Assembly: GCF_021869535.1 (NCBI RefSeq)
Contig: NW_026262723.1
Coordinates: forward strand, 32,054,001 to 32,118,000
Direction of reading: 5' to 3'
DNA: 64,000 nt
Source of the DNA: Mytilus californianus
Lineage: Eukaryota
Shown here: positions 25,360 through 58,900 of the stretch, piece after piece
How the letters are laid out: every line of letters starts with the position of its first letter
How positions within the stretch are numbered: position 1 is the first letter of the stretch
Notes under the pieces: generated by a model
The model's database searches: none
Told to the model about the DNA's origin: nothing
What the model saw: the letters and a program-made list of their open reading frames with translations, nothing else
Position numbers and translations under genes: made by a program

Positions 25360-25401
25360 CGCCAGACGCGCGTTTCGCCTACAAATAAATTATCAGTGAC
25401 G
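25360..25401 (-). ncRNA. Type I hammerhead, mutated
   Basis: Core reads CUGAUAA and stem II is disrupted; GAAA CGCGCG UC is retained. Confidence 0.65.
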
Positions 25402-33824: not shown

Positions 33825-33860
33825 TACGGAGCCCTGTTGGTCTCACACAGATTATAAAGT

Positions 33861-34420
33861 GTCTTTTAAAGTCCTGCGCTGAAGATGTGTAAAGACTAGC
33901 GCTGGAGATGTAAAGTCTAGCGCTAGAGATGTAAAGTCTAGCGCTGGAGATGTAAAGTCCAGCGCTGAAGATGTAAAGTCTAGCGCTGGAGATGTAAAGT
34001 CAAGCGCTGAAAATGTAAAGTCTAGCGTTGGGGATGTAAAGTCTAGCGTTGGAGATGTGTAAAATCTAGCGCTGGAGATATGCAAAGTCTAGCGCTGGAG
34101 ATGTAAAGTCAAGCGCTGGAGATGTAAAGTCTAGCGCTGGAGATGTAAAATCAAGCGCTGGAGATGTAAAGTCAAGCGCTGGAGATGTAAAATCAAGCGC
34201 TGGAGATGTAAAGTCCAGCGATGAAGATGTAAAGTCAAGCGCTGGAGATATAAAGTCTAGCGCTGGAGATGTAAAGTCAAGCGCTAGAAATGTAAAGTCC
34301 AGCGCTGGAGATGTAAAGTCCAGCGCTGAAGATGTAAAGTCTAGCGCTGAAGATATAAAGTGTAGCACTGAAGATGTAAAGTCAAGCGCTGGAGATGTAA
34401 AGTCTATCGCTAGAAATGTA
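33861..34420 (+). repeat. 21-bp tandem array inside the left TIR (gctggagatgtaaagtctagc)
   Basis: About 26 units visible directly. Confidence 0.95.
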
Positions 34421-34509
34421 AAATCGTGTTTTATAGCGTGTTTGAAATAAGGATGCAAGAAAGGGATCAACTTATTTTTATGTATTTTCACCTTACAGTT
34501 TGTAATAGG

Positions 34510-35716
34510 AAACATATATTTTGTCTTGGCCTTGTGCATGAATGATCAAATAATGGTCCTTCAAAAGTTTTATGACTTTAGTGCCGATCGGAAAACCAAG
34601 ATGGCTGCCACAGCCGGACATGGTTTAATATAGAACCCTATGGAGAAAAATGCAAACAACTTTTACGGAGAAACCGTTTGTCATATTGATTCAAGTTTAT
34701 GCATAAATGATCAGATATTAGTCCTTAATAAATTTACGATTTTGGTGCCGATCAGAAATCCAAGATGGCTGCCACAGATGGACATTTAATATTGAACCAT
34801 ATGGTAGTACATGTAAACTGCTCTTTTTGGTTCACCTGGTCCGAAGGACCATGTGAACTTTTGTCATCATTTTGCGTCCGTCGTCTGTCGTCGTCGTACG
34901 TAAACATCTTCTCTGAAACAAATGGGCCAATTCAAACCAAACTTGGCAGGAATGTTCCATGGGTAGACCTCGTCAAAGATTGTTCATTTGGTGCTGATCC
35001 GTAATCCAAGATGGCCGCCACCGCAGGAATTAGTTTAGCATAGAACCCTATGGGAAAACATAAAAACTGCTCTTTTTCAGATACCTTTTGACATATTGAA
35101 TCCAATATATGTCAGGACTGATCGAATAATTGTCCTTCATAAATTGTATTATTTTGGTGCCGATCGGAAATCCAAGATGGGCGCCACAGTCGAACATAGA
35201 TTAACATAGAACCCTATATATGCATGAATGATCAAATGAAGGTTCTTGATAAATTTTATGATTTTGGTGTCGACTGTAAATCCAAGAGGGCTTCCAGGGT
35301 CAAATACAATTTAACATAGAACCATATAGGAAAAAAAATGTACAAACAACTTTTACAAAGAAACTTTGACATATCGATTCCAGTTTATGGATAAATGATC
35401 AGATAATAGTCACTAATAATTTTAATGAATTCGGTGCTGATTGGAGAACCAAGATGGTCGCCACAGGCCGAGACAGTTTAACAAAGAACCATAAGGGAAA
35501 ACATGTGAACTGCTCTCTTTGAGCATCCGTATGGTACAATGAATCTACTTTATGCAGGAATGATCAAATAATGGTCCTGAATTTGACAATTTTATGATTT
35601 TTATGGCAACTGCAAATCCAACATGGATTCCATGGCCAAATATAGTTTAACATTGAATCCTATAAGAAAAACATACTAACTACTTCTTTAACCAGGCTCG
35701 CTAGAGCCTCTAGTTT
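34510..35716 (+). mobile_element. Helentron-like element(s) with ccaagatgg-containing internal repeats
   Basis: 5' hairpin gttcacctggtcc-gaa-ggaccatgtgaac (34830-34858), a (GTC)n tract, and 3' hairpin ggctc-gcta-gagcc followed by tctagttt. Confidence 0.6.
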
Positions 35717-35759
35717 AAATGCATATATCTCACGAAATTTTTTACCTGGGACCACCAAA

Positions 35760-36600
35760 TTTGGTGCCAATGTAACTTGAGGCATAAGCTTGTCAGTCGG
35801 TCACATATCGGCTGACCTTGATCTCATTTTCATGGTCCAGTGACCAGGGTCAAGTTATCATGATTAGGCCAGTTTCTCAATAACAAGGTATGGTAGGCCA
35901 ATAATAGTTGGAGTGTGAAATTCATTGTTAGGTGTACATGTCAGTCTTACATATGTCAACTGACCTTGACCTCACAAACAAGTTTTTGTGATTATGTCAG
36001 TTTCATCGGCAGTAACTAGGTATGGTAGGTCAATATTTGCTGTATGAATTTGTCATAAGGTGTACATGTCTGTGTAACATGTGTCGACTAGGTCAGTTTG
36101 ACCTCATTGTCGGTGACCAGGGTCAAGTTTTCGTGGTAAGGTTAGACTCTTAGTAACTAGATATGATAGGTCCATAATATGTGGTTTGCGAATGTGTTGT
36201 AAGGTACTGACCTTAAGGTCATTGTCATCGTCCAGTGACCAGGATCAAGTGTCTGTGAATAAGTCAGTTTCTCAGTAATTAGGTATGGTAGGTCAATAAT
36301 ATTTGGTGTGTTAATTCCTTGTAAGGTGTACATGTCGCAGTTTGACAGGTGTCAACTGATACATGTAATGACCTCATTCTCACAATCCATTTACTTTGGT
36401 CAAGTTTTCTTATTTTGATGCATTTAAGGATCCAGTTTTGGATTTCTGATACGCTTACATCTGTGTCCACCTCCATATTAAGGCGAGACATCTTCGTGAG
36501 TCTGTAAAAGTCAAATCCCCAATTCTTTGTGTAAGATGGAGGATTAAATTCCTGTTTTATGATTTTGTCTCGCCTGGATCAAAGTCACTTAAGGCGAGAC
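35760..36600. repeat. Degenerate tandem-structured repeat (gaccttgacctca / gtgaccagggtcaag)
   Basis: Motifs recur 4-5 times, with hairpin tgtctcgcct..aggcgagaca at about 36566-36601. A related piece lies at about 55820-55920. Confidence 0.5.
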
Positions 36601-38141
36601 AAAGGGATTGTTTTTTTATTGTCCCAGTATTTAATTGATCTAATAGGCAATAACACGCGTCTTTCCGCCATCCCCCTCTGTGTTTCTCCTCTGAAGTCCT
36701 TTGGCGATTGGTAAATTTGGTATGGAAGATTTCTCAATGAACAGAAGAATATATTGCATTTGCGTCGTGATTCTTGTTTTTTCTTGCCAAATATCAAACT
36801 TTGTCTTTTTTTTTTGCCAAACAAACCGTTTCCGTGCATGATTCTTCTTTGTAGTCATTTGATGGATTGGTCTGATATTTGGTATGCAAGTTTGTCCTGA
36901 TGAACAGAAAAGAAACTGCTGCAATTTTTAAATTAATTAAACCAACATTTTTAACCCCCTAATGATAATTATCACCCTTCCCTACGGCTATATCTACGTG
37001 CTGAGAGCAACCGTAAAAGTTGTCTCGAAATGGCACGTGCAGAGAGCAGAACTTATCAAGCGAGAGCAGAACTTATCAAGCGATTCTCTAAACGTTTAAA
37101 CAATATATACTACGTCAAAATTTTGATGACATATATATGTTATTTAAAAAATGTTCATTTACACATTTTGATTTCAATTAAAACGAAACTATTTAGAATT
37201 CCCGAATGAAACGTTCTAAAAACTAGCTGGACGTCGTTCTTATCAGTTCTGCTCAACGTTGCAAAAACGAACTCTACCGTTTCTCTATACAAGTATGTAA
37301 AATACCTGTGGAAAATGAAAAAGAAAGATCATTGGTCAATTTTATTAAAATGTAAAGTCATAATATGGATGATGATACAGTTGGTGAACCAGTATTGATA
37401 TGCAAAATAACATCGTGCCGCTTCCCGCACGAGGATAAAAGCTTATGTGAAGGGTTACTGCCAGTCACCCAGCGTCAAAACCGTTGCACTACGAAAAGTG
37501 TATACACAAGTTAATGTAGTCCCAACCAAAAAGATAGATCTAAATATCTAAAAGGAAACATAATTGAGCATGTATGTGCGGTAATATAAGTTGAAATAAA
37601 TTCATTGCATTGAAGTGCAAGGTTTCTAGATTATCAATAAAATAGCCTGTGATTTCAAAAATTGTACCACTTAAAGTCAAAGCAGGCAAAATGATAGGTG
37701 ACTGCAGATCACATTTACATAGCACCAACTTTTAAAATGTTGTAGGTTTGTTCATGTAGGGTGTCATGGATTTGCAACTATTTATATGAGGGACAAGGAG
37801 GAAATTGGACGGCGAAACATGAAGCATTGTTTTCGAAAGTATCTTATGAATAAGACTTGTTTTACCATGGTTAAAGGACATGTCATAATAATATATGTAT
37901 TCGAAAGGGTCTCAAGTCATGATATTCATAACTTTTATCATGCGCTTAAGACACCTCGTGACATGACTTATGATGGTCTTATGATTGTCATAAATGTTAC
38001 ATCACACATTTTTTTATTTGCTCGTGCAACATGCAGATCCAGGATTTCGACAAAAAAGGGGGCCCAAACTAGGCATCGTTTGGAGTGGTATATGCTAAAA
38101 GTCTATACATAATGTATATATATATATATATATATATATAT

Positions 38142-38329
38142 GTAGCTCCATAGGGGGCGAGGCCCTGCCCTCTCCGGCAAAATCCGTCTCTGCATGCAGC
38201 CTTTCTTACTCTTTTTTTGGCGCTGTTTGTTCTTCCGTTTAATCTGCTAAATAGTAAAGATCTTTTATTCTCCACTTCGTCAATTAAAATCCGAATCTCC
38301 TGCGACGTACAATTTGGAATCCTTTTCTT
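38142..38329 (-). pseudogene. Myb/SANT-like DNA-binding domain remnant; second copy about 47045-47233 frameshifted
   Basis: KKRIPNCTSQEIRILIDEVENKRSLLFSRLNGRTNSAKK resembles the R-x-P-N-F...E...L...V-E...L-F start of Harbinger-type Myb/SANT proteins. It ends in an (AT)n tract. Confidence 0.5.
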
Positions 38330-39280
38330 TGTAATGATTAATTTTGATAAATATTTATAATATTTCTTTCTTTATATAGTAGTTCATTAACGTATTTGCA
38401 CGGGCATTTCTTTTAGCGGGTACTCTATGTACCAAATCTTACAAGTATTCCCAATAATATAACACTTCATTACAATAAAACATGAACGCGAAGTTTTAAC
38501 CAAATTTAAACAAATTGTCAACTCAGATTTTAACCCCTCTTCATATATAATTTCATGTATATCGTGTTCATTATACTGAAAAAATATGAAATATTCGTAT
38601 AAGATAAGAATGGTAATAGTTATTATTTTCATAGTTACATGTTTTCATTTTTGACTGTCATTAGAGCATCCTGGTATGACTGTCTTATGACAGCTATGAT
38701 TTACATTCTATGGCATATCATATGATAGTCATGAAATGGTAATAAAATTTGCCTTAAGATGAATCGAAAACCAGCCCCTGGACTTTTTAAGAATCAACAA
38801 AATCAAATGTGTACTTATTTATTTCGTGTAAATAGGTATTTATTTACTGTACAGCAACCGAATTTGGAATCCAGAAAAAATCTACAGGGGCATATTTAGG
38901 AAGTTAACTGAATCAACAGGTGAACTTCGTCTTAGTTCAAATGTTGTGTTAGTGGAGTATATGTTCCATTTCCTTCCTTGAGTGTTGCAGTGTTTTTTCA
39001 TTTTTGTGGTAATTCACGATGTCAAAGAGTGGTGTCGTGTTAAAGGTCTTTTAAATTTAATTAAATATTATTTCTTACCGTTTTATTCCACATAGAAGAT
39101 CTTTTTTTAACCTGCAGTAGTTTCATTTAAAAGGAGAACTTGTATGTGTTCACGTGTGGAATTCATTGGTGGCATTAATATTCTTTCAGGTAGATAATTA
39201 GTCATGCCAAAAAATTTCTTTCGTTGCAATTTTGAAAACATCGCTTGGAGCAAATTACACTGATATCGTCCTTTTTCTTA

Positions 39281-39930
39281 AAAAAAGTTCATCGGAAGAT
39301 ACCAAGACCTTGTTGATAAACATATATGAATAGTATCAACTTCACAAATAATACGATGTTTTTGAAGATTCTAGGCACTGACGTTGTTTATCATCTTATC
39401 AATAATAACGTGTTATAGTATTCTTGTATTTGTCTTTGTAAATCAGTACTTATACTTTTTAGTCAATTTTTGGTAATATCCATTTGACGTGACTCGGTTT
39501 ATACATCCCGTCAATGTGTTATTGTGCTATGGTAAATTTGTGTATTCTTGTCTATCGTTTTTGTTAATGTGCTTTGTCAATATGCCTTTTAGTTTTTTTC
39601 TAGTTTTTCTTTGTTGACATATTTGTTTGTTTTTATAGTAATTAAGATTATAACACATTTTTACCTATTATGTCTGTTTGTTTTGTTCACACATCGTTGT
39701 CAATTTATAAAGGAATTGTATGCGACTGTCATACAAGTGAGAGGTTTAACTAGCAATAGAACCAGGTGTAATCCAAGGTTTTCTACATAAGAAATGCCTG
39801 TATTGAGTGAAGAATATGATAGTTGTTATTCGTTCGTTTGATTTGTTTGAGCTTTTGATTTTGCCATTTCCTTAGGGCCTTCCGTTTAGAATTTTCCTCG
39901 GGGTTCCGTATTTTTGCTATTTTATTTTTT
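39281..39930 (+). mobile_element. 5'-truncated Penelope-like copy (C-terminus and 3' tail); duplicate at about 48191-48841
   Basis: KKFIGRYQDLVDK...STSQII and a tail ending aattttcctcgg.gttc.gtattttt match 31665-32500 in reverse complement. Confidence 0.8.
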
Positions 39931-42900
39931 GGTACATCGCAGGGGTCTAAGCGACACGTACATAAAAGTCATAAACTAATTTTTTGAATATTTAATTACT
40001 AATGGGTGTCTTAGGAGGTCCACAAAGGTTTTATTCGAAATGTTCGGGGCATGACTAGTACGGTGGGGTGTCAGATCTTTTATTTTTTCAATTAATAATT
40101 ATGACTAGATTTTGGTTTTCTGCCAATCTAATTTTCTGTAATTTTACATCTATATGTTTTGAACTACATTTGCATGTGTACAATTACATTATATCAAGGC
40201 TCTTGTATAGCCCGATCCAAACAATTTTTCTGTTCTGTGCTTTATACTGATAAATATGTCGGGTTAACATGTACCACCAGTGTTACTTCCAGGCACATTG
40301 ATGAAGCAACCAGATAACAGCATCACAGTACCTGCATCTTCATAAATGTGGAACATGTTAAATTTTGTAACATCAGCCCAGGCATAATGCAGTTGATACT
40401 AAATACTAAAATTACTTTATTCGTTGCATAAAACGCACTTAAATGCATATGTCTTTCTTCTCGTCAAATGACAGTTTACTAGTTATCGTCCTGTACCATA
40501 ATTCTCTGAGGTGCATGTAGGTCACCCTGTTATTGATCTGTACCATAGTTATCTGAGGTGCCTGTAGTTCACCCTGTTGTTGACCTGTACCATAATTATC
40601 TCAGGTGCCTGTAGGTCTTCCTGTTTTTGATCTGTACCATAATTATCTCAGGTGCCTGTAGGTCACCATGCTATTGATCTGTACCATAATTATCCGAGGT
40701 GCTTGTAGGTCACCCTGCTATTGATCTGTACCATAATTATTCTATTTTCTTATCGTTATTCATACGTATCTTTATATATGTAATAAACGCCCTTTCGCAA
40801 TAAAACAAAAATGATAAAAATATTTTTCATCTTAAATCACTGAATCATCAGTAAACATGTGTTACATAACTGCACCATTCATGCGTTTATGCTGAACATT
40901 CCATCTTTACCAACGTGTTATTTACGAAATCTTCCTTTGAGTGTTCGGTTGTGTGATCAGATTTCTCCAGTTGTGGTCGTTTTTACAATGTAAGTACAGT
41001 TAAACTTTTACATATTATATTGTTCTAAGTTACTAACTTTTATAGAACCTATCATCATTGCCTTCTACCTTGTACAGACGACGATTCGTTGAACTGTTTT
41101 GCTATCTTTAAACATTCTGGCAGTTTTTCCCGTCCTGAAATCATATTTGCATAACAAATAATTAAACATAACATTAGAACAATGTGGTGCTACGTGCATC
41201 TTACTAGCCTTGTGCCGTCTAAGTATTTTATTTTTAGATTCTACTATTAATTTCGACTTTTCCCAAAATGTTGTTGGTTTGCAATTGTCATATCTTTTAA
41301 TTTGTCAAAATCATATACCATCCCTTACTTATGTCTGTTTTCATGACTTTTATGCAGTCTTTTTTGCATGATATTTTAATGCATACTGCAGTATTTTCCC
41401 TATATGAAAATTAATAAAAGATAATAACGGTTTCAATGTTATCACATTTATTTGTATTAATAGTGTAGACTTGCTTACTTTTCTCACCGTAATTTCTTTT
41501 CTGTATATCTTTTATACAGCTTCAGCATTCCTTTACTTCATCATGTTCAAATTTTGGCTTATTAACTTTATTGGATTCACTTTACATATTACTTACATTT
41601 ATTGCTTTATGTTCACTATATTACAAGTAGTATCAAATCAACAAGTAAATGTGTATGTTTTCCTTAGGTCTACATTTAACATATGTAAGGCCTTCATTTC
41701 TTCAAATGGTGTTGTCTAGAAATAAGATTAGACTGTTTTTCATATTACGTCAATTTACCTTAAACTTCTTTATTCTTTATAATTTGTGATGACAAATTAT
41801 TAGTATAAACGATTGTATATTTTTTTTATAATGTTTCTATTATTTAATTATTTTCATTCCAAAATCTTATATAACTTCAGCCTAAATGCAATAATACTGA
41901 TAATTAAATGAATTTAAGATTGTACCGTTATTATTTTATTCTTCTAAAAAAGACCTGAAATATTTAATTGGTCAAAATTTCAGTCTGTTGTTCATATTTT
42001 CAGTGCTATCGATTCAGTAGTTTTCACACATCTAAAGACCTTGATATCCAAGTTGTGAGTAGTTCCTATACTGTATGACTGAGATTGTGAGTTCGAACCT
42101 TGCACGAAGCATCTGGGTTCGTCTTCAATCTTGAGTTCGAAAAAAGATTGTCAGTTTTCTAGCAAGAAATATGTGTTCTCTCCGGGCAATCCAGCTTCCT
42201 CCACCAACACAATCTGGGGGCAAGGATATAGCCAAGAGTGCTGAAAGTGGCACTAAAAGTCAACAATCATTCAATCAATTAAAAACTCGAATTGTATAGT
42301 TAAAAAAAATAAATAAACAAGATGTATAAATGATATATAAGCATTATAAAATAGATATGGACTTGCTTTGCTGAGCACAACAAGAACATAAATATTGCGT
42401 TTAAGTTCCTGTTTTTTGTAGTCTGTGACAAAATAATCTCACATACGTGCAGTTACATATATGCATTTAACATTAACTATAGAAGTAAGAGTATTTCACA
42501 TTCTATAAGCCTATTCACATACATTCATATGTAACAGTAGCTATTGCAGTACGAGTATTTCACAATCTTTTCTGTTTGCTTTGTATTGTTTGCTTTGTGT
42601 ATAAAATGCCTTGATTTTGTATTTGTTTTTGTTTTGTTTGTATTTTTGTTGTTGTTGTGTTTGTTTTTGAGAGGAATGGGTGGTAACATTAAGCCCCACA
42701 GGAAATATTATGTTTTCTTGAGATGTTGAAAATAAGTTTATTCTTTTAAACTCTTCTTAAGTAGTGTTTTTCATGTTATGTAGCTTTGTTTTATTTTGAT
42801 TTCTTCTTGAATAAATCTGAAAATAAGTGGATTTTTTGTCTTTCTGAAGATCTTGATAATAGTAAGAAGATTGACTAAAAAATTAAACAATTAAAACCCG

Positions 42901-42936
42901 GGTCCATAATGTGTCAGTCCTAGGCCATAAAGTACA

Positions 42937-43140
42937 GGCCACCGTTTCACAAAGCCTTCTTAACTTACGATCACTGTATCATTTAACGATCCGTTCACGT
43001 GTGGTTCTACGTTCCCGTTACGTGTGTTTCACAAAGGCATCGTAAAGGACTACTAAGTTGATCGCAAGTTACGCACTGTGTATCATCGTATGTGTATCGT
43101 AAAACGGAACTCTAGCTGTAAACAGGAGGTGTGAATCGTA
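42937..43140 (+). mobile_element. Possible PIF/Harbinger-like terminus
   Basis: ggccaccgtttcacaaag with gtttcacaaag repeated subterminally. The opposite end was not found. Confidence 0.3.
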
Positions 43141-46100
43141 GTTTATTTACATCGGAATATGACACACTCTTCTTTCACAGACCGACGAGTCGAGCATGCC
43201 GATGAGAGCAGATGTGAAAATGTTTGCAGAGAGAATCCTTCAACATCATTGAAATTATTTTGCCAAATTGGTTTCATGGATAAATATTGTTATCCTTACA
43301 TCTTATATTTTATGTTTTGAATTATATTTTTTTGTTGAGGAAAGTTTCTGCAGATATTTTCAGGTTTGTTTGATACATGTGGTCAGATGAAATCCATTAG
43401 TAGTTTCCATGTGGGAAACTATCAGACCAATCTATTTGATGTCTGAGGGTTTTAGCTGTTGTTCCCCTGATGGATCGGTAGTTTTCTTTCCGATATGCTT
43501 TATTGTAGGATTTTCGGCTTTCCTCTACCAGAAATACAGCTGGGCATTTAGCGGTATCGGTTTGGAATCCAAGTATGTCCTTTCAGATTTTTCGTTCGTT
43601 GCTTTGGCATTTGTGCGGCATCCGGGGTGACCTTATCCTTTATTTTGTACATAATTGTTTTTATATTTTAAATATTTATATTTGTGAGGACGAGCGAACC
43701 AGGTGAGTGGATGTGTTCGTATGTTTTTCATTTGTAGACGAAACACAAGCCTTGTATCTTTGATGGGTTACCTTCATTGATATTCAATAATATTTTTGTT
43801 TTTTGTATCGGAAATTTGGAATAAAAGGAGAGTGACGAGACGTGGTTATTTCTGATCAAAGAATTAAACGAACTTTTTAACAATTATTTGATAATGTCTA
43901 AAGTTATTGTAGTACTGCAATTTTAGAGGAGATATGATTGATTGACTGCTGTTTTCTGAACGTACAGTGGCAAATATTTCATGCAGATTTATGACCAAGA
44001 GAAGAATTTATAAACAAGAAATAAGAAGCTGCATGCGTTGTCGTTGAAAAAGAATTAAAAGAAAGTCCAATAGAAATAAACAAAACCAGTGTATATAATG
44101 TGCGAATCCTGAAATACCATTTTCACTGTATCCTTTATGAATTTCTAATGTAGAATGATAAATAAACAGACGACAAATTCATGATTTTTGAATAGAATAA
44201 GAAATAAGATATAATGTGGACGGTTTTTATAAATTCATGATATAGGTATGAGATGCGGACGGGTTTTCATCGCGTCTACAGCGATCCAGGTGTAAAATTG
44301 ATACACAAATAGATAAATGTTAAGAATATTTCACGAACAGAGCGTGCAAGAGATTTAAATGCAGCAATTTAGTTTCATTTGCAGAAAAATGTACCTTTTA
44401 ACATAATTATTAATGTTGTATAACTTAAAACAGGTTTTGTTATTCAGCTTGTTGATATTGAATTAAATTCCACTATGCTGTTTTCGTTATGCGATTCATG
44501 TTTACTGTCGAAAAATGATACTAGACTTTCATGTTCACTGTAGAGGCGATTCATTTCTTTTGTACATGCGATGCATTTTCACGGAAGGAAATTAATTAAT
44601 TTTCATCATATAACGTCTTTATTCAGCCGACTCTCTAACAAAATTTATGAAGTCAGAAGGATTGATTATATGTGACCCGCCACGATATTTCCAGGCTTAT
44701 GGAGGTAGAACATCATTGTGAGAAAAACGCCGTTAACTATATGTGACTAGCCACTTCCAGGCTTATGAGGGTACATTGTCTAAACTTTGCTTTTTGTATA
44801 TTTATCTAGAACATTCTGAAGCAAAAAAAAAAAAACTCTCTGTCATGTTATTATGACCTATTTTTTTGTAATAACTATGAAACGAGTCATTTCGAATACC
44901 GACATGATAATGAGACTGTTCGATGACGAATTTTTCATTATCGAAGACACTAATTTATAAAATACAAAATTATTGTATTCTATTGGCGCTTAGTAATCTT
45001 CAACAGCGTATTTGAATAAAAATTTCAAATGAAATAAATTTACAACATTACAAATAGTTCTTAGCTCTACTTTAGAAAATGTAATTTAAACTTGTTAAAA
45101 TGAAATAAGTATAAAATTTGTCAAAGAAAGCTTTTAGAATTTCTTCTTTTTTTTTAATTTGTCTTTTAACTTAGATTTATGATGCATGTCTCTATACATA
45201 GTATGCGACGCGTAGCAGTTTATAAGTAGTTGTTCTCATATATGCATTTGATACAGTGCATTTATTATGGATATATTTTAGACTCCATTAATGAAAATCT
45301 ATAGATCAGAGAATTTTGATTTTTTGTATCAATTTAAAATGTAGATTTAAATATTTATGTGTCGTTGATTCAGACAAAAAGATCTTATCATGTCAAAATC
45401 ATGATGCAACAGGAAATTTTCATATGCACGGTCTGAACACAAGAATTAACAGAATAAGCATATTTCTTACTGAATAGAGAAAAATGGCCAAAAGAATTAC
45501 AGAATGCAGAAATGTAAAACCCACCCACCCCCCTTTTTCCCCCCTAATCAATATCCTCATGTATCATTGTGACGGATAGTTTTGTTTGTTCTATTTAACT
45601 GTTTTTATTTTCGAAAAGAATATTTGTACAAGGTGTTGTTAATGAATGTAACGGACAATATATACCATGCCATCTCAGCCGACTCGTAATTTCATTTTTA
45701 ATGAAAGAAAGTATTTAAAAGCTTCTCTCCCTGTGCAATATGATTTATTAAACTCATTAGGCAGAGCAATGTTTATGACTACTTGCATAATTGTTTAATC
45801 GTATTAAATTCTGTATCAAATTTATATTAATAATAAAAGTTTTAGATTTTTAATATTGAAAACGTGTTAAAATTATTTACTTGCATTAATATTGATATAA
45901 AAACATCCAGTTCGTTTTTTTGCGTTTTTTTTTTTGTAGATCTAAGAAAAAAAGCAACTCTGTTACACTAAAACGATTGACTAATTAAAATTGTCACATA
46001 GTGTCTTCTTATGTCGTCTGAATTACAATGTAAGTTATTGATCAGTAATTTATATCTTCGCCAACCGTAATTATTATCTACAATGTTTATTTGGCATGCC

Positions 46101-49100
46101 ATACTCGATAGAAGTGCGGACGCACGAGGATAAAAGCTTATGTGAAGGGTTACTGCCAGTTACCCAGCGTCAAAACCGTTGCATACGGTGTATACGCAAG
46201 TTAATGTAGTCCGAACCAAAAAGATAGATCTAAATATCTAAAGGAAACATGATTGAGCATGTATGTGCGATAATATAATTTGCAATAAATTCATTGCATT
46301 GAAGTGCAAGGTTTCTAGATTATCAATAGAATAGCCTGTGATTTACAAGTTATATTAATTCCGGCAAAAAAATGAGATTAAAATCGGCGATGTTATTATA
46401 TGCCAACTGACTTAGTTGGTGCTTAACATCATAAGGTCTGTCAGTCTCTATAATATGCATTTTTGTCCTTTAATTTTAACTTTAGGTTTCAGATATTCCG
46501 TTTTTATCTTTTGATTATCCCTTTTTACTACTTTGAAAATTACTGTTCATTGAAAATATTTATAATACTACTTAAAGTAATAGCAGACAAAATGATAGGT
46601 GACTGCAGATCACATTTACATAGCACCAACTTTTAAAATGCTGTAGGTTTGTTCATGTAGGGTGTCATGGATTTGCAATTATTTATATGAGGGACAAGGA
46701 GGAAATTGAAAGGCAAAACATGAAGCATTGTTTTCGAAAGTATCTTATGAATAAGACTTGTTTTACGATGGTTAAAGGACATGTCATAATAATATATGTA
46801 TTCGAAAGGGTCTCAAGTCATGATATTCATAACTTTTATCATGCACTTAAGACACCTCGTGACATGACTTATGATGGTCTTATGATTGTCATAAATGTTA
46901 CGACATCACACATTTTTTTTTATTTGCTCGTGCAACATGCAGATCCAGGATTTCGAACAAAAAGGGGCCCAAACTAGGCATCGTTTGGTGTGGTATATGC
47001 TTAAAGTCTATACATAATGTATATATATATATGTATATATATATGTAGCTCCATAGGGGGTGAGGCCCTGCCCTCTCCGGCAAAATCCGTCTCTGCATGC
47101 AGCCTTTCTTACTCTCTATTTGGCACTGTTTGTTCTGTCGTTTAATCTGCTAAATAGTAAAGATTTTTTTCTTCTCCACTTCGTCATTTAAAATCCGAAT
47201 TTCCTGCGACGTACAATTTGGAATCTTTTTCTTTGTAATGATTAATTTTAATAAATATTTATAATATTTCTTTCTTTATATAGTAGTTTATTAACGTATT
47301 TGCACGCGCATTTCTTTTAGAGGGTACTCTATGTACCAAATCTTAAAAGTATTCCTAATAATATAACACTTCATTATAATAAAACATGAACGCGAGGTTC
47401 TAACCAAATTTAAACAAATTCTCAACTCAGATTTTAACCTCTCTTCATATATAATTTCATGTTCATCGTGTTCATTATACTGAAAAAATATGAAATATTC
47501 GTATAAGATAAGAATAGTAATAGTTATTATTTTCATAGTTACATATTTTCACTTTCGACTGTCATTAGAGCATTCAGGTATGACTATCTTATGACAGATA
47601 TGATTTACATTCTATGACATATCATATGATAGTCATGAGATGGTAATAAAATTTGCCTTTAGATGAATCGAAAACCAGCCCTTGGACTTTTAAAGAATCA
47701 ACAAAATCAAATGTGTACTTATTTATTTCGTGTAAATAGGTATTTATTTACTGTACAGCAACCGAATTTAGCATCCAGAAAAAATCTACAGGGGCATATT
47801 TAGGAAGTTAACTGAATCAACAGGTGAACGTCGTCTTAGTTCAAATGTTGTGTTAGTGGAGTATATGTTCCATTTCCTTCCTTGAGTGTTGCAGTGTTTT
47901 TTTTTTTCATTTTTGTGGTAATTCACGATGTCAAAGAGTGATGTTGTGTTAACGAATAAAGGACTTTTAGATTTAATTAAATATTATTTCTTACCGTTTT
48001 ATTCCACATAGAAGATCGTTTTATAACCTGCAGTAGTTTCATTTAAAAGGAGGACTTGTATGTGTTGACGTGTGGAATTCATTGGCATTCATATTCTTCC
48101 AGGTAGATGATTAGTCATGCCAAGAAATTTCTTTCGTTGCAATGTTGAAAACATTGCTTAGGGCAAATTACACAGATCTCGCCTTTTTTCTAAAAAAAAA
48201 TTCATCGGAAGATACCAAGACCTTGTTGATAAACATATATGAATAGTATCAACTTCACAAATAATACGATGTTATGAAGATTCTAGGCACTGACGTTGTT
48301 TATCATCTTATCAATAATAACGTGTTATAGTATTCTTGTATTTGTCTTTGTAAATTAGTACTTTCACATTTTAGTCAATTTTTGGTAATATCCATTTGAC
48401 GTGACTCGGTTTATACATCCCGTCAATGTGTTATTGTGCTATGGTAAATTTGTGTATTCTTGTCTATCGTTTTTGTTAATGTGCTTTGTCAATATGCCTT
48501 TGTGTTTTTCTTTGTTTTTCTTTGTTGACATATTTGTTTGTTTTTATAGTAATTAAGATTGTAACACATTTTTACCTATTATGTATGTTTGTTTTGTTCA
48601 CACATCGTTGTCAATTTATAAAGGAATTGTATGCGACTGTCATACAAGTGAGACGTTTCGCTAGCAATAGAACCAGGTGTAATCCAAGGTTTTCTACATA
48701 AGGAATGCCTGTATTGAGTGAGTAATATGATAGTTGTTATTCGTTTGTTTGATGTGTTTGAGCTTTTGATTTTGCCATTTCCTGAGGGCCTTCCGTTTAG
48801 AATTTTCCTCGGAGTTCCGTATTTTTGCTATTTTATTTTTTGGTACATGGCAGGGGTCTAAGCGACACGTACATTAAAGTCATAAACTAATTTGTTGAAT
48901 ATTTAATTACTAATGGGTGTCTTAGGAGGTCCACCAAGGTTTTGATCGAAATGTTCGGGGCATGACTAGTACGGTGGGGTGTCAGATCTTTTATTTTTTC
49001 AACTAATAATTATAACTAGATTTTGGTTTTCTGCCAATCTAATGTTCTGTAATTTTACATCTATATGTTTTGAACTACATTTGCATGTGTACAATTACAT

Positions 49101-49401
49101 TATATCAAGGCTCTTGTATAGCCCGATCCAAACAACTTTTCTGTTCTGTGCTTTATACTGATAAATATGTCGGGTTAACATGTACCACCAGTGTTACTTC
49201 CAGGCACATTGATGAAGCAACCAGATAACAGCATCACAGTACCTGCATCTTCATAAATGTGGAACATGTTAAATTTTGTAACATCAGCCCAGGCATAATG
49301 CAGTTGACACTCAATACTAAAATTACTTTATTCGTTGCATAAAACGCACTAAAATGCAGATGTCTTTCTTCTCGTCAAATGACAGTTTACTGGTTATCGT
49401 C

Positions 49402-50200
49402 CTGTACCATAATTCTCTGAGGTGCATGTAGGTCACCCTGGTATTGATCTGTACCATAGTTATCTGAGTTGCCTGTATTTCACCCTGTTGTTGACCTGTA
49501 CCATAATCATCTGAGTTGCCTGTAGGTCACCCTGCTATTGATCTGTACCATAATTATCTGAGTTGCCTGTAGGTCACCCTGCTATTGATCTGTACCATAG
49601 TTATCTGAGGTGCTTGTAGTTCACCCTGTTGTTGACCTGTACCATAATTATCTCAGGTGCCTCTAGGTCATCCTGTTTTTGATCTGTGCCATAATTATCT
49701 CAAGTGCCTGTAGGTTACCATGCTATTGATCTGTACCAGAATTATCCGAGGTGCTTGTAGGTCACCCTGCTATTGATCTGTACCATAATTATCTGAGTTG
49801 CCTGTAGGTCACCCTGCTATTGATCTGTGCCATAATTATCTCAGGTGCCTGTAGGTCACCATGCTATTGATCTGTACCAGAATTATCCGAGGTGCTTGTA
49901 GGTCACCCTGCTATTGAAATGTACCATAATTATCTGAGTTGCCTGTACATATCCTATAATAGGTGCCTGTAGGTCACCCTTCTATTTTACATATTCTATC
50001 ATATGTGCCTGTCGTTCACCATTGTATTTATCCATATCATATTATAGGGGCTTGCAAGTCACCCTGCTATTTAACTTATCCTTTTTAGGTGCCTGTAGGT
50101 CACCATGTTATTTTCCCTATCATATTATAGGTGTCTGTAGGTCACTATGTTTCTTTTTCCTATCATAGGTGCATGTAAGTCACCATGCTATTTATCCATA
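49402..50200 (+). repeat. About 47-bp satellite, left arm (ctgtaccataattatctgagttgcctgtaggtcaccctgctattgat)
   Basis: Direct reading. A short truncated copy lies at about 40490-40740. Confidence 0.92.
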
Positions 50201-50343
50201 CAGTATTATAGGATTCAACCTTGATGCACCTATGATACAGATCTATATGGTGATTGTATCTGCAGGCTGTTATAATCCGCCAAAAATAGATAAATATCAG
50301 TGTGACCTTCAGGCACATATGATAGGCTATGTTACATAAATGG

Positions 50344-52620
50344 GTTTATTTACAACCACTGGGTCGATGCCACGGCTGGTGGTTTTTATTCCCGAGGTTA
50401 TCACTAGCCCGGTAGTCAGCACTTTTGTGTTGACATGAATTATCATTGATTATAAATTAACTGTTTACAAAACTTTACAGTTTTGAAATACTAAGTTAGC
50501 AGGGGTTTAAATTATTGGTGGTCCGAGGTCCGTGACCTTTCACTGTTGCAATCGGACTTTCGTTTTGGTTTCTAGCTACGCCCGACGGACCTTCGATTTT
50601 AAAGGAAATAAAATGATCTTTGCTGACCTTTTTAACCATCTGTATCGTCATTTTTAAGCCATATTATTATTAAAATTGAGGGAAAAAAATGTTTCATCAT
50701 CGACCTTGCCGACAAGTGATAAAAGTTATTTTTAACCTTGTATTTCTTGGAAACACCAGGTTATAAATAGTTGCGAGAAGTCACGTGACAAATCATTTAA
50801 TCAGTTAGACATTTTCGAACAAAATGAGTCCGTTTCACTTTGGTGTCACGTCTTTCAAGAGAAAGCCTGAAGATCATGGATGGTCTTTAACCACAGGCAC
50901 TTGTTTCTATCCATGGGAAGGTCGACTATCCATAAATATAGAAGGATATTCAACCTTCCCTTGGATAGAAACAAGTGTCTGTGTTTTCATGATCAACGTC
51001 TTTAAAAGAAATCAAATGAAGATCTCACTAAAGACCAAAAATGCGATCGTGAAAAACGGGAACGGACATTTAAGTCCCACTGGAAAATCGATCGAACCGT
51101 GGCTATTATAAGTTATCTACGTTCATATTAGTAGGTATGGATATTTTAACACCCTTCAGTACCATGTACACCCTTCGGCTTCTGTAGATAACGAATCTAT
51201 CCCCGGTCTTAGTCCAAATCTTGCGATTTTTAGAGAAATTCAACCACAAAATGTTACGTAAAAGCAACGTTTTTTTTCATTTTTTAAAAATCTTTTATTG
51301 AAATTTGGGAATTTGACATATTTTTAACTGGGTGTAGGGTACTACCTTTGGTAGAACCCTACAGGTAGTCAAATACAAGACGTTTTTAATCCATAGACAG
51401 AGAAACGGGAATGGGTCGAATTTGGCGCTCAATGTTGTGAGAGTTACTTCATAGACGGTGTGACGTCAACGTGGGTCATTTGCATAGCTAGGTCAGTAGT
51501 CCCATTCATTGACAATGTGGCAGCCAAGTGATGCATTTACTGAAATGAGTGCAAATGTTCGACATAATAAGATAAAATCGTTAGTTGATTAAATATTTAA
51601 TTACAGACATCATGGATAATCTACAGAATTCGATATTTCACAAGGAACAACCAAGGAACTAAGGAAAACGCGCGTGATGTTCCCCGTTGTAATGTGTAGC
51701 AACGTCTGTGTATATGGGTTAGCAACACCCAGGGGCTATGGGTTTTGTAACGACGTGCGTTATTCAATCAAAATCCTAGAAATATACTAAGCCGGGGATA
51801 AATTTTGATGAATCAACTGGTCTAATGTCATGCACATACTGCCAGAAGTTCCCCACCCATTCAGAAAAAGAAAGTAAGGGGAACACAAAATCTTAAAATA
51901 GACCGAATAAAAATATACAAGTGACACTTCAGCATTTATCTTATCCATGAAAGTGACCCAAATTTTAAGTCTAAACATTAATTGTCAGACACTAAACTTG
52001 GCCAATGTATTCTCAAGCAGCAATGTAAGCCTGATCAGTTAAATAGATATAAGGTTCTTTTCAACACTGCATACAGTATTGCAAAAATGGGAAACCCTTC
52101 AGTGACTATGAATTTATTCTTGAAATCCAGTGTAAAAATGGTGTTGACGTGTAAGCAGTATTTCAATATTGAAGGTTGTAAACTGTTTATTCGCTGAATA
52201 ACCCATTATATGAGAAATGAAACATCACATGAAGTTCAAATATGATGAAACAATCTAACCTTACTCCAAAAGCACATTAATTTTGTTTCTTATTGAATTA
52301 TGAAATATTTCATGTAAAAGTAGGACCTGGGATTTAGGTTGTGGACCTTTCAGTTTGGAGTGTCAAAGGTCCTGGACCTTCCAGTACAAAATGTTAATTT
52401 GAACCCCTGACTAAGGCTTGTTTACCTCAGGAATAGATTACCTTAGCTGTATTTGGCTAAACCTTTTGGTATTTTTGGTCCTCAACGCTCTTCAACTTCT
52501 TACTTTATTTGGCCTTTTTAACTTTTTTGATCCGAACGTCATTGATAAGTCTTTTGTAGACGAAACGCGCGTCTGGCGCAAAATGCAAAATTTCAATCCT
52601 GGTATTTATGATGAGTTTAT
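50344..52620 (+). mobile_element. Retrozyme monomer (50344-50499 plus 52410-52620) split by a hAT element; hammerhead at 52537-52579 mutated
   Basis: Reverse complement of the 25322-25918 family. Core reads TTGATAA-GTC..GAC-GAAA-CGCGCG-TC. Confidence 0.8.
50500..52409 (+). mobile_element. hAT-like deletion derivative with ZNF862-type transposase remnant at about 51790-52200
   Basis: TIRs CAGGGGTTTAAATTA / TAATTTGAACCCCTG. Remnant reads FDESTGLMSCTYCQKFP, LFNTAYSIAK, then shifted PFSDYEFILEIQCKNG, YFNIEGCKLFI. The TSD is not clean (actaag on both sides). Confidence 0.75.
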
Positions 52621-55568
52621 ATACATAGCTGTGTGACCTGCAGGCTCCTATGACGGGCTCTGGAAAATATCGATGAGGATAAGACCTGCATGCACCTTTG
52701 GTCAGATCTATGGTGACGTGACCTGCAGGCTCATACGATGGGCTATGGTACAGATACATATCAGTGTGACCTGCAGGTAGTTACAATAGGCTAACGTTAC
52801 ATATAAACAAAAGTGTGACCTGAAGGCAATGATGGTACAGATACATTTTGGTGTGACCTGCAGGTTCCTATGATAGGATATGGAACATAAAAAAGTGGTG
52901 TGACCTACAGGCACCTATAATAAACCTGCAGGCACTATGATAGGATACGGTACATAAAAATGCGGTGTGGCCTTCAGGCACCTACGATTTTAGATGGACA
53001 TACAAAACGCTGTGTGACCTAGAGGCACTTATGATAAACCTGCAGTCACCTATGATGGAATATTGTAAATAAAAATAAGCTGTGTGACCTACGGGCACCT
53101 ATGATAGGCTGTGGTATAAATAAATAGCAGTATGACCTGCAGGCTCCTATGAAAGGCTTAGATACAGACATGTGGCAATGTGACCTGTAGGCACCTATGA
53201 TAGGCTATGGTGCAGATCTATAGTGAAGTGACCTACAAGCACCTAGGATAGGCTATTGTACAGATCTATGGTGATGCGACCTGTAGGCACCCATGATTGA
53301 CTATGGTACAGATCTATGGTAGGGTGAACTGCAGGCACCTAAGATAGACTATAAAACAGATAAATATCAGTGTGACCTGCAGGCACCTATGATAGGCTAT
53401 GACTCAGATAAAAAATTCGACCTGTAGGCACCTATAGACTATGGTACAGGCACCTATGATAGGATTTGGTACATAAATAAAGCTGTGTGACCTACAGGCA
53501 CCTTCGATAGGCTGTGGTACAAATAAATAGCAGTGTGACCTGCAGGCTCCTATGAAAGGCTTAAGTAAAGAAATATAGCGATGTGACCTGTAGGCTTCTA
53601 TGATAGACTATGGTGCAGATCTATAGTGAATGACCTACAAGTACATATGATAGACCCATGATAGACTATGGTACAGATCTGTGGTGATGTGACATGAAGG
53701 CACATATGCTAGGCTATAGTACATATAAAATATTGTATGGCCTGCAGGCACCTATGATAGACTATGGTATAGATCTATGGTAATGTAACCTGCAGGCACT
53801 TAAGAAAAACTATAGAACAGATAGATATCAGTGTGAACTGCAGGCATCTATGATAGTCTACGGTACACATAAAACGTTGTATGGCCTGCATTCACCTATA
53901 GACTATTGTATAGAAAAAACGTTGTTGGACCTGAAGGCACCTATGATAGGATTATGTGCAGATATATGGCAATGTGACCAGCAGGCACCTATAATAGGCT
54001 ATGGTACAAATAAATAGCAGTGTGACCTACAGGCACCTATGATAGGCTATGTTGCAAATAAAAAGTTGTATGATCTACCGGCACCTATGATAGGCTATAG
54101 TGCAGATCTGTAGTGAAGTGACCGACAGGCACCTATGATAGACTATGGTGCAAAATCTATGGTGATGTAACCTGCAGGCACCTATAATAGACTAAGATAC
54201 AGATGAATAGCAATGTGACCTGCAGGCACCCATGCTAGGCTATAGTGCAGATCTATGGTGGTGTGGCCTGTAGGCACCTATTATAGTCTTTGGTACAGAT
54301 AAATAAGCAATGTGACCTGCAGGTACCAATGATAGACTATAGTACAGATCAATAGTGATGTGACCTGCAGACACCTACGATGGGCTATGGTACATATAAA
54401 AAGCTGTAAGAACTGCAGGCACCCATAATAGGCTTTGATCTATGTTGATGTGACCTGTGTGCATTTATGATAGGCTATGGTACTGATAAATAGTAGTGTG
54501 ACCTGCAGGCTCTTATGATAGGCTTTGGTGTAGATCATAAGTGAAATAACCTACAGACACCTATGCTAACTGCGAGTACTCTCAGATCTGTACTTAGTGT
54601 TTTTTGTTTGTTATTCGCATGTACAAGTACCCATCCACGTCCACTTTGTGTTATGTTAGTCTGTATTTCTATTGTATCCATTTGATGAGTTAAGCCTTTT
54701 TCAACTGATTTTTAAATTTTGTTTTTATGTTCTACTGTTACACCACGGTCCCAGGTTAGGGGAGGGTTGGCGCTTTCAAACTAGTTTAACCCCGCCACAT
54801 TCTGTATGTGCCTGTCCCAATTCAGGAACCGGTAATTCAGTGGTTGTCATTTGTTGCTGTGTTACATATTTGTTTTTCGTTTATTATTTTGTACTTAAAT
54901 TAGGCCGTTAATATAGCTGACTATGTGGTATGGGCTTTGCTCATTGTTAAACACCGAAAGGGGACCTATAGTTGTTAATTTCTGTGTCATTGGGTCTATT
55001 GTGGAGAGTTGTCTCATTGGCAATCATACCACATCTTCCTTTTATATGTATGGGGCAAATCTATAGTGATGTGCCCTGCAGGCACCTACCATACAGATAT
55101 ATAAATGAACGTATGACCTGCAGGCACCTTTAATAGCATTTGGTGCAGATCTATGGAGATTTGACCTGCAGGCTCATATTATAGGCTATGTTACAGATTA
55201 TTAGCAGTGTGACCTGCAAACTCAAATGATAGGCTTTGTTACAGATCTTAAGTGATGTGATCTGCAGGCACCTATGGTACAGATATTTTTTGGTCAGACT
55301 GTGTGAACTGCAGGCACATTTGGTACAGATAAATTATGGTGTTACCTGCAGGCACCTATAATATTGTATATGATAATACGCGTAGGTATATGCAGCACTA
55401 CTTTTTTATAAGTGGTGACTGGCAGTAACCGTTCACATAAGCTTTTATCCTCGTGCCCGCTTCCCGCGCAAAAAAGTTGGGAGAATTTGATCGTTGTTAG
55501 ATTTTACCCAGAAATATCGCCTTTGAAGGGTGATAAACATATTATCTGAATTTTTGACACTGAGATAT

Positions 55569-55674
55569 TGTAAAATATCAACCCGCTCGACAGAATATAA
55601 AGCTTTGTGGCTCGTTTGCTACGCTCACTAGCCTCCAAACTTCACATTCTGGCTCACGGGATGATATTTTACTA
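55569..55674. repeat. About 105-bp imperfect palindrome
   Basis: gtaaaatatcaacccg..agaat pairs with attct..cggga.gatatttttac. Confidence 0.6.
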
Positions 55675-57119
55675 TATCTAGCTGTCAAAATCCCGATAAT
55701 ATATACATATACCCACTGGCGGGGGACACATTTAGCTACTATGTAGCAATGCCAAGTGTTAAGGCGGTGGTAACAATGTAAACGTTTTATTAACTTGATT
55801 ATCTCAGACACCTCGGACAACCATATTGGGTATGAAATGACTTGTCAGCAAGTTGCTTTTCCCATAGCCTTGACCTCATTTTCATGGTCAAGTTGTCATG
55901 TTAAGTTTTTGGATAAGTGTTTGTAAAAAAATATGTGGTATGTATATGTGTGTCATTCTGGCAATATGAGGATAAACCCAAGGGGAAAATACAAACCCAC
56001 GTACAGGGTAAATGCGTCAATGGCAGGCCGGACATCCATCAGGACAGAAAACAGGGGAAACTGACTGGGACAACGATATATCAAGTCGAGTCGACCCAGA
56101 TACAACGGTTGCTTCCCTGATGGGGAAAGGCAAAACATCCACATTATGGAATCTCGGAATGAAACCACCCTGCAATTACAGGAACAACCAGTCCACAGAT
56201 TTCGCAATGATAAGTCTGTAAACATTCCTTGCGGAAAGAATTCCGACCAATCAGAAACAAGTATTGGTCATGGAGTCATGTTTGAAAAATGAGGGAACTT
56301 TGTAGAGATTAATGGTGAGTAGTTTCAGAGGAGAAATTAAAATTTAAAAAGTTTAACGGACGGACACAAAGTGATGGCATAAGCTTAGAAATTCTTTTGG
56401 GTCAGAATAGCTAGAACGGGTTCCGGCTCTAACTGTCACGTCTAAGTAGAAAGAGTGTATATAAGCACTAACCTATCATTTCTAGGTGTTCCAGACGGAG
56501 TTTTGGCAGGCTCAAAAATGTAGATTAGGTTTTCATGTGGTTATGTGATGATTTATGTCAGTTGCTTACCGCAGGTCGGCGGTTTCCTCCGGGTACTCGG
56601 GGTTTCTGACCAATAAAACTAACCGTCATGAAATAACCAAACAAATTATGGAAAGTTATGTTGAACCCCATCAAAATAAAAAAATTGATAATGGAAAACT
56701 AGCATGACACTCTAAAATTGTGTATCAAATTCCTTCAATTAATTCAAATATCACTACCATAAAAAGATCAGAATTTTGCTTTCAACGATGGGACACCATT
56801 AATCATGGGATAACGGCGATAACAAATTGTTATGCCTCGGGCGCGGTAAGTATGTGTTATCCAGATCACAAGGAGCAGTCTACGTCATAAACTGGTGTTG
56901 GCTTGTATTCTATGACGATGGAAGTGTGGTTGTCAGCCGAGAACCAGCTTATCTACGTCATATACCTTTTCAATTTGAAGGGCAAGAAATAGGAAACTCG
57001 TGGTTTTATGATACTTATCCTTATATGACAATAACAAATAAACCCGCCTAATTCATCTCGAAATAATTTGGAGAAAACAAATTAAAAGTTTTTAATTATT
57101 GTTCAGTGTATTGTAGTAA

Positions 57120-58486: not shown

Positions 58487-58519
58487 CCTTATTTGCAACA
58501 CGCTATAAAACACGATTTT

Positions 58520-58855: not shown

Positions 58856-58900
58856 TTAAAAGACACTTTATAATCTGTGTGAGACCAACAGGACTCCGTA

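What the first reader, a model, noticed from the sequence alone, without database searches (positions are those of the whole stretch)
37418..55465. 18-kb compound foldback transposon that seems to have moved 5.4 kb of unrelated DNA
There are two left ends (37427, 46122) and one right end (55456). The perfect TSD ccgcttccc pairs the outer left end with the right end; the inner left end has a different flank (gaagtgcggac). The duplicated 3.3-kb arms differ by many substitutions and indels while the TSD is perfect. This fits joint transposition of a truncated copy, intervening DNA (40741-46121) and a full 9.3-kb copy from a donor locus. Such macro-transposition could contribute to presence/absence variation in bivalves. 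No transposase is encoded inside.
Basis: partly seen in the sequence, partly recalled or inferred. Interest (0 to 1): 0.8.

Follow-up and report, generated by a model that had tools for sequence, protein, structure and literature searches.

The report
Three-ended composite transposon in a mussel
An 18-kb piece of mussel DNA, made of a broken copy and a whole copy of one gene-less jumping element with 5.4 kb of unrelated DNA between them, sits as a single bounded insertion with a 9-letter target duplication inside another transposon; the structure is real, but whether all of it jumped together could not be decided here.

Summary
Identical 43-bp ends lie at 37427, 46122 and, inverted, at 55456. 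CCGCTTCCC flanks only the outermost pair. The two 3.3-kb left arms are 95.5% identical. The 5.4-kb middle segment has no ends, target duplication or genes of its own. There is no transposase.

New here: the composite lies inside a ~25-kb integrase-type transposon (33825-58900). Four paralogous copies of that host element, in Mytilus coruscus, M. galloprovincialis and M. edulis, carry the intact empty site with one CCGCTTCCC. This proves an 18,030-bp insertion with a 9-bp duplication.

The host copy has only 1.4% private substitutions, while the arms differ by 4.5%. So the arms were already different when they arrived, and in-situ duplication is unlikely.

Joint transposition (macrotransposition) fits, at about 0.4. 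Two multi-step histories give the same structure:
- a nested insertion followed by recombination between the two right arms;
- ectopic break repair inside the 47-bp array.

Composite and three-TIR elements are known in maize, Drosophila and tomato. This is a new example of a known kind, of moderate interest.

The parts
37418..37426 (.). Left copy of the 9-bp target site duplication CCGCTTCCC
   Evidence: It is present once in the empty sites of four paralogous host-element copies.
37427..37469 (+). Outer left terminal inverted repeat (L1), 43 bp
   Evidence: (I2); 98% complementary to the right TIR.
37427..40740 (+). Truncated copy: left arm L1 (3,314 bp), ending inside the 47-bp array
   Evidence: 95.5% identical to 46122-49651.
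40491..40740 (+). 47-bp tandem array, 5.3 units, cut 15 nt into a unit
   Evidence: Its best match in the full copy is 49543-49792, at 95.6%.
40741..46121 (.). Middle segment M (5,381 bp, 31% GC): unrelated, non-coding DNA
   Evidence: It has no terminal repeats or TSD, no tRNA or Rfam match, no ORF above 82 aa, no Pfam hit and no similarity to the rest of the window.
46113..46121 (.). Nine bases AGTGCGGAC abutting the inner left end; the flank of a separate integration event
   Evidence: It is GC-rich, like the outer target site.
46122..46164 (+). Inner left terminal inverted repeat (L2), 43 bp
   Evidence: (I3).
46122..55456 (+). Full-length non-autonomous copy (9,335 bp)
49402..50212 (+). 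Left internal array: 47-bp units x 11.6, then degenerate 42-bp units
50213..52619 (.). Central non-repetitive region, no coding capacity; it contains pieces of dispersed short repeats
52620..55363 (-). Right arrays of 48-bp units, inverted relative to the left array and interrupted at about 54569-55096 by a dispersed short repeat
   Evidence: (I4-I25).
55414..55456 (-). Right terminal inverted repeat (R), 43 bp
55457..55465 (.). Right copy of the 9-bp target site duplication CCGCTTCCC
33825..58900 (-). Host element in which the composite is nested. It is a ~25-kb (about 7 kb without the insert) foldback-like transposon with arms of 21-bp repeats (about 33825-34513 and 58426-58900) and decayed integrase-core transposase pieces at 57218-58525 on the minus strand.
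   Evidence: Paralogous copies are L001-L004.

Best explanation
A gene-less cut-and-paste (TIR) transposon family of a Mytilus genome has 43-bp ends starting GCACGAGG, a 9-bp target duplication and inverted internal 47/48-bp arrays. This is the signature of Foldback-like / Mutator-type elements.

At this locus a transposase supplied in trans joined the outer left end (37427) and the right end (55456) to a staggered 9-bp cut in CCGCTTCCC, inside an older integrase-type transposon. That step is shown.

The most likely single history (inferred, not shown) is macrotransposition. At a donor site a right-truncated copy and a complete copy lay 5.4 kb apart in the same orientation. The transposase paired the outermost compatible ends instead of the two ends of the complete copy. 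The whole 18,030 bp, including the 5.4 kb of intervening host DNA, was then excised and reinserted as one unit.
For: - Exact transposase-type junctions at both outer ends, with a 9-bp TSD that occurs only there.
- Four empty sites in paralogous host copies show the flanks contiguous with one CCGCTTCCC.
- The inner left end is intact to its first base but has a different flank and no matching 9-mer after the right end. So the complete copy's own original target duplication is not at this locus.
- The arms differ by 4.5%, while the host copy has only 1.41% private substitutions (60/4245). The two copies were therefore already distinct before arriving.
- M is not a nested element and is unrelated to the host element and to the rest of the window.
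- Macrotransposition by closely linked same-orientation elements is an established reaction (Huang & Dooner 2008, as cited in PMC2775673).
- MULEs with a third, solo TIR, an outer TSD and no inner TSD are documented (PMC3310237).
Against: - No donor locus, no second copy of the composite and no other family member was seen. The family's usual TSD length and canonical structure are unknown.
- At least two other histories give the identical end product (see the rival explanations).
- Ferguson & Jiang (PMC3310237) judged three-TIR MULEs to be mostly 'dead on birth' and could not settle how they form.
Confidence: 0.4

Rival explanations
1. Nested insertion followed by deletion. A family variant already carried M as its internal region (left arm, short array, M, ..., right arm) and transposed into CCGCTTCCC. 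A second, complete copy then inserted into M at AGTGCGGAC in the same orientation. Recombination between the two directly repeated right arms (2.7 kb of 48-bp arrays plus the TIR) removed everything between them, including the second AGTGCGGAC.
For: - It explains the outer TSD, the exact inner TIR junction with a different flank, and the missing inner TSD partner.
- Long tandem arrays in direct orientation are good substrates for such recombination (arrays).
- Both 9-mers are GC-rich in a 31-37% GC setting. This fits two genuine integrations with the same target preference.
Against: - It needs three or four events, including self-nesting in the right orientation.
- No trace of a second right arm or of sequence beyond the insertion point remains.
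- No M-carrying family member was seen, but none could be searched for.
Confidence: 0.25
2. Simple insertion, then ectopic break repair. An ordinary 9-kb copy (L1 arm ... right arm) inserted here. Later a double-strand break in its 47-bp array was repaired by copying from another family copy elsewhere. Synthesis ran from that copy's array through its left arm and 5.4 kb into its flank (M). The end was then joined without homology to the broken array at 40740.
For: - It needs the fewest events.
- One junction lies in a repeat array that offers homology, and the other (40740/40741) is a non-homologous join in mid-unit.
- The arms differ by 4.5%, as expected for two separate copies.
Against: - It needs about 8.9 kb of ectopic synthesis ending in an end-join, which is long for filler DNA (general knowledge, not tested).
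- There is no direct evidence for it.
Confidence: 0.2
3. Assembly artefact: a chimeric join or haplotype merge created the second left arm and the middle segment.
For: - Mussel genomes are highly heterozygous, and 4.5% divergence with indels could be allelic (general knowledge).
- No reads could be laid on the junctions.
Against: - There are no N runs in the window.
- The DNA upstream of the inner arm (M) has no similarity to the DNA upstream of the outer arm. A haplotype merge would produce such similarity.
- A repeat-driven mis-join in the array would bring in another copy's right flank, not place M in the middle. Producing this structure would take two independent mis-joins, one of them without homology.
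- The inner TIR junction is base-exact.
Confidence: 0.08
4. In-situ duplication of the left arm after a simple insertion, by slippage or unequal exchange at this locus.
For: A perfect 9-bp TSD and near-perfect TIRs are compatible with any age up to about 5% divergence.
Against: - The arms differ by 4.5% (149/3300). The host element copy, which must be older than the insertion, has only 1.41% private change, so an in-situ duplicate should differ by 2.8% at most.
- It does not explain where M comes from. M is absent from all four empty-site copies.
Confidence: 0.03

Closest known systems
Macrotransposons formed by two closely linked Ac/Ds (hAT) elements in direct orientation in maize (Huang & Dooner 2008, Plant Cell 20:2019; cited in PMC2775673 and in bioRxiv 10.1101/082677)
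   Same: The outermost compatible ends of two same-family elements bound a unit that includes the DNA between them. One family-length TSD flanks the whole unit, and the inner ends have no matching TSD.
   Different: The maize events were caught genetically, with the donor known. Here only the end product is seen. The superfamily differs (8-bp TSD hAT against a 9-bp TSD element). One partner here is truncated and neither encodes a transposase.
Mutator-like elements with an additional solo TIR (types 3-6 of Ferguson & Jiang 2012, PMC3310237)
   Same: Three TIRs, a recognisable TSD around the outer pair, and none around the inner TIR. The elements are non-autonomous and usually single-copy.
   Different: The plant cases mostly have the extra TIR close to a terminal one. 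Here the extra end comes with a 3.3-kb arm and is separated by 5.4 kb of foreign DNA. The host is an animal, and the superfamily is not established.
Foldback-like / Phantom-Mutator elements, such as Tm1 of root-knot nematodes (PMC3169594) and Drosophila FB
   Same: A 9-bp TSD, inverted arms containing tandem sub-repeats, and many gene-less members.
   Different: The arms are asymmetric here. The left array lies 3 kb in from the end and the true TIR is only 43 bp. No Phantom/MULE transposase was found. Foldback-like architecture evolved in several superfamilies (PMC3169594 discussion), so the architecture alone does not assign the family.
Giant FB-bounded transposing elements of Drosophila melanogaster (Ising's TE carrying white and roughest) and bacterial composite transposons (Tn5, Tn10); from general knowledge, not checked in a paper here
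   Same: Two copies of one mobile element mobilise the DNA between them.
   Different: In those cases complete elements flank the cargo, often in inverted orientation, and movement was observed directly.

Membership tests
Macrotransposon / composite DNA transposon | The outermost ends are one left-type and one right-type end of the same family, in inverted orientation | tested here: met
   37427-37469 and 55414-55456 are 98% complementary.
Macrotransposon / composite DNA transposon | A single target site duplication flanks the whole unit, and the target is intact in an empty site | tested here: met
   there is one CCGCTTCCC in each of four paralogous host copies.
Macrotransposon / composite DNA transposon | The inner end has a different flank and no TSD partner | tested here: met
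Macrotransposon / composite DNA transposon | The unit existed as such before insertion (a donor locus, or the same composite with other flanks) | not testable with these tools
   No genome-wide DNA search was available. The TIR and the array core are absent from the metagenome and viral collections.
Foldback-like / Phantom-Mutator (MULE) elements | A 9-bp (8-11 bp) target site duplication | tested here: met
   For the family's TSD size see PMC3169594.
Foldback-like / Phantom-Mutator (MULE) elements | Long inverted arms built of tandem sub-repeats | tested here: inconclusive
   Inverted 47/48-bp arrays exist. They are asymmetric (0.8 kb against 2.7 kb), and the left one lies 3 kb in from the end.
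Foldback-like / Phantom-Mutator (MULE) elements | A MULE/Phantom DDE transposase in the autonomous partner | not testable with these tools
   No transposase is encoded inside. The autonomous partner could not be searched for.
Three-TIR MULEs (Ferguson & Jiang types 3-6) | An extra solo TIR in direct orientation with one terminal TIR, a TSD around the outer pair only, and a non-autonomous element | tested here: met
   The definition is in PMC3310237.
Three-TIR MULEs (Ferguson & Jiang types 3-6) | Membership of the Mutator superfamily | not testable with these tools
   Only the TSD length speaks for it.
   One search found no terminal inverted or direct repeats at 40741/46121. Searches found no RNA-derived element.

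The most novel reading that the evidence does not exclude
This is a natural macrotransposition in a bivalve. A trans-acting Foldback/Mutator-type transposase paired the ends of two neighbouring non-autonomous copies and relocated 5.4 kb of ordinary host DNA. If frequent, such events could move exons or genes and add to the large hemizygous fraction of mussel genomes.
Probability: 0.4. Interest if true: 0.55.

Novelty: new member of a known kind. Interest (0 to 1): 0.4.

Why it matters
If the unit moved as a whole, it is a clean natural example in an animal of two transposon copies carrying host DNA to a new place. Its target site is verified by empty sites. This reaction is known mainly from maize genetics and classic Drosophila work.

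It would give a concrete, testable route by which DNA transposons reshuffle non-transposon sequence in mussel genomes, which are noted for presence/absence variation. As it stands the cargo has no genes and the history is unresolved. The value lies in a well-delimited test case, not in a new principle.

Tried and rejected
There is no read-level test of the junctions or of alleles.
2. Finding other family copies through predicted proteins. Ten ORFs of the arms, M, the centre and the flank are not in the protein collection. The 108-aa arm ORF has no relatives there.
3. Exact scans for the 25-nt terminus in metagenome and viral contigs, and for the 20-nt array core in metagenome contigs, found nothing.
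4. The four Mytilus loci fetched (92 kb) contain no copy of the element and no M. They hold only short dispersed repeats shared with 52411-52605 and 54780-55050.
5. The 359-aa ORF beside the host element was tried as an anchor for an orthologous locus. It proved to be a highly repeated retrotransposon protein.
6. M as a nested element is rejected.
7. The haplotype-merge signature, meaning similarity between the DNA upstream of the two arms, was not found.
8. The earlier notes of this scan hold no record of this terminus.
9. It is replaced by the comparison with the host element's age.
Full report
**Observation**

The window has no N runs. The 21-nt terminus starting GCACGAGG occurs exactly three times: at 37427 (+), 46122 (+) and 55456 (-). 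None is expected in shuffled sequence.

The inverted-repeat arms are 43 nt. The outer left end is 98% complementary to the right end, and the inner left end 95%.

The nine bases CCGCTTCCC stand immediately outside 37427 and 55456 and nowhere else in 64 kb. The inner left end is preceded by AGTGCGGAC, which has no exact second copy.

The first two bases (GC) of the terminus also follow the target in the empty site. They belong to the element, because the inner end has them after a different flank. The duplication is therefore 9 bp.

**The two left arms**

- 37427-40740 aligns with 46122-49651, with 149 substitutions in 3300 aligned sites (95.5% identity) and 13 indel events. The largest indel is 212 bp, present only in the inner arm at 46350-46561.
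- The outer arm stops 15 nt into a unit of a 47-bp tandem array, after 5.3 units.
- Those units match best the fourth to eighth units of the complete copy (49543-49792, 95.6%).

**The complete copy (46122-55456, 9,335 bp)**

Its parts are, in order:
- the TIR;
- about 3.2 kb of non-repetitive arm, which includes a fragment related to a retrotransposon tail seen at 31667-32498;
- a 47-bp array followed by degenerate 42-bp units (49402-50212);
- a 2.4-kb centre;
- 2.7 kb of 48-bp units in inverted orientation (52620-55363), interrupted by a dispersed short repeat;
- the right TIR.

**Coding capacity**

The longest ORF in the composite is 108 aa. Nineteen stop-free pieces of 70 aa or more were listed. 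Sixteen of them were scanned against Pfam, and none reached a family cutoff. The three not scanned all lie in the inner arm (46624-46974, 46901-47149, 47294-47548).

The only near-hit is a sub-threshold Myb/SANT-like match at 38072-38371 on the minus strand (E 5e-4, 20.3 bits against a cutoff of 21.7).

**The middle segment**

40741-46121 (5,381 bp, 31% GC) shows:
- no terminal inverted or direct repeats and no target duplication;
- no tRNA or Rfam match;
- no ORF above 82 aa;
- no Pfam hit;
- no similarity to any other part of the window even at word size 7.

It is not a nested element.

**Context and empty sites (new)**

The composite lies between two inverted arms built of 21-bp repeats (about 33825-34513 and 58426-58900, about 90% complementary). 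Between the composite and the right arm, on the minus strand, are three frame-shifted pieces of an integrase-core transposase. Pfam PF24764 matches at E 1e-11 and 2e-10.

The best database relative of the first piece is a Mytilus coruscus protein, 95% identical. Its 90% cluster also holds M. galloprovincialis and M. edulis proteins.

I fetched the four loci. They are paralogous copies of this host transposon, with different outer flanks. Identity to the window is about 92-98% by block, and about 96% in the long blocks.

In all four, window position 55451 runs straight into 37428. The alignment shows one copy of CCGCTTCCC between the same left and right flanks.

The window comes from a Mytilus genome.

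**Timing**

That is weak: at 4.5% divergence nine bases stay identical about two times in three.

A better clock is the host element. Against its four paralogues the window copy has 60 private substitutions in 4,245 fully aligned sites, or 1.41%. This is an upper bound on the per-lineage change since the host copy arrived, and so also since the composite arrived.

A duplication made in place could then differ by about 2.8% at most. The arms differ by 4.5%: 149 substitutions observed against about 93 expected. So the two arms were already separate copies of the family when they came to this locus, and in-situ duplication is unlikely.

**What is shown and what is inferred**

Shown: a transposase joined the outer left end and the right end to a 9-bp staggered cut. 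The inner left end is also a base-exact transposon end, next to a different GC-rich 9-mer, so it records a second genuine integration somewhere.

Inferred: how the pieces came together. Three histories fit all the data.

- (a) Macrotransposition. A right-truncated copy and a complete copy lay 5.4 kb apart in direct orientation at a donor site and moved as one unit through the outermost ends. This reaction was established for maize Ac/Ds (Huang & Dooner 2008, cited in PMC2775673).
- (b) Nested insertion, then deletion. A family variant that already carried M inserted here. A complete copy then nested into M in the same orientation. Recombination between the two directly repeated right arms deleted the interval and the second AGTGCGGAC. 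[quoted passage not shown]
- (c) Ectopic repair. A simple copy inserted here, and a later break in its array was repaired by copying about 8.9 kb (array, left arm and flank) from another copy, ending in a non-homologous join at 40740.

In (a) and (b) the unrelated 5.4 kb was carried by transposon ends. In (c) it was not. I put (a) at about 0.4, (b) at 0.25 and (c) at 0.2.

**Assembly artefact**

I put this at about 0.08.
- A haplotype merge should make the DNA upstream of the two arms alike, and it is not.
- A repeat-driven mis-join would not place M in the middle.
- The inner junction is base-exact.

**Family assignment**

A 9-bp duplication and inverted arrays of sub-repeats are what Foldback-like and Phantom/Mutator elements show (PMC3169594). 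But foldback architecture arose in several superfamilies (same paper). The arms here are asymmetric, and no transposase or autonomous partner was available. The element works like a MULE/Foldback-type non-autonomous element, but membership is untested.

**Comparison and novelty**

Three-TIR Mutator-like elements with an outer TSD and no inner TSD are described in tomato, rice, maize and Arabidopsis (PMC3310237). Macrotransposons are described in maize. Large Foldback-bounded units are known in Drosophila (general knowledge).

The present case is a new example in a bivalve. Its cargo is unusually long, its target site is cleanly verified, and it is nested in another transposon. It is a new member of a known kind. 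The suggested link to presence/absence variation is not supported by anything here, since the cargo has no genes.

**What failed**

- Exact and homology look-ups of ORFs from the element found nothing.
- Pattern scans of the metagenome and viral collections found nothing.
- The fetched Mytilus loci hold no family copy.
- The neighbouring 359-aa ORF is a repeated retrotransposon protein and is useless as a locus anchor.

Noticed in passing
window 33825-58900: The composite is nested in a foldback-like host transposon. Its arms are built of 21-bp tandem repeats and its termini start TACGGAG. The 6-bp flanks GAGACC/GAGATC match at 5 of 6 positions. Decayed integrase-core (PF24764) transposase pieces lie at 57218-58525 on the minus strand. 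Paralogous copies about 96% identical exist in M. coruscus, M. galloprovincialis and M. edulis. The 6-bp flank and integrase-type enzyme suggest an IS3EU-type element.
   Followed up: partly
L002 and L004 (M. galloprovincialis UYJE01005618.1; M. edulis CAJPWZ010000716.1): The host-element copies in these two species share the same 45-nt left flank. They are therefore probably one orthologous insertion that predates the split of the two species.
   Followed up: no
window 32703-33782 (-) and 31667-32498: A 359-aa ORF belongs to a very abundant bivalve retrotransposon family. It had 2,677 database relatives, some with an RVT_1 domain. Its downstream tail is 77-82% identical to 39279-39930 and 48193-48841 inside both left arms. 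The arms therefore carry an old retrotransposon fragment.
   Followed up: partly
window 38072-38371 (-): There is a sub-threshold Myb/SANT-like DNA-binding domain match (PF13873, E 5e-4, 20.3 bits against a cutoff of 21.7) in the outer left arm. It may be a remnant of a captured or nested gene.
   Followed up: no
window 54686-55051 and 52410-52620; also 24956-25693: Short dispersed repeats inside the right arm and centre recur at 24956-25693 in the window and many times in the four fetched Mytilus loci, with up to 90% identity over about 140 bp (97% over a 37-bp stretch). They are probably SINE- or MITE-type insertions, not part of the family core.
   Followed up: partly
window 4231-4854 (+): A 207-aa ORF carries a RIG-I C-terminal regulatory domain (PF11648, E 2e-14). 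It is probably an exon of a RIG-I-like receptor gene.
   Followed up: no
window 37418-37426 and 46113-46121: Both integration targets of this family seen here are GC-rich 9-mers (7/9 and 6/9 G+C) in DNA of 31-37% G+C. This hints at a GC-rich target preference.
   Followed up: no
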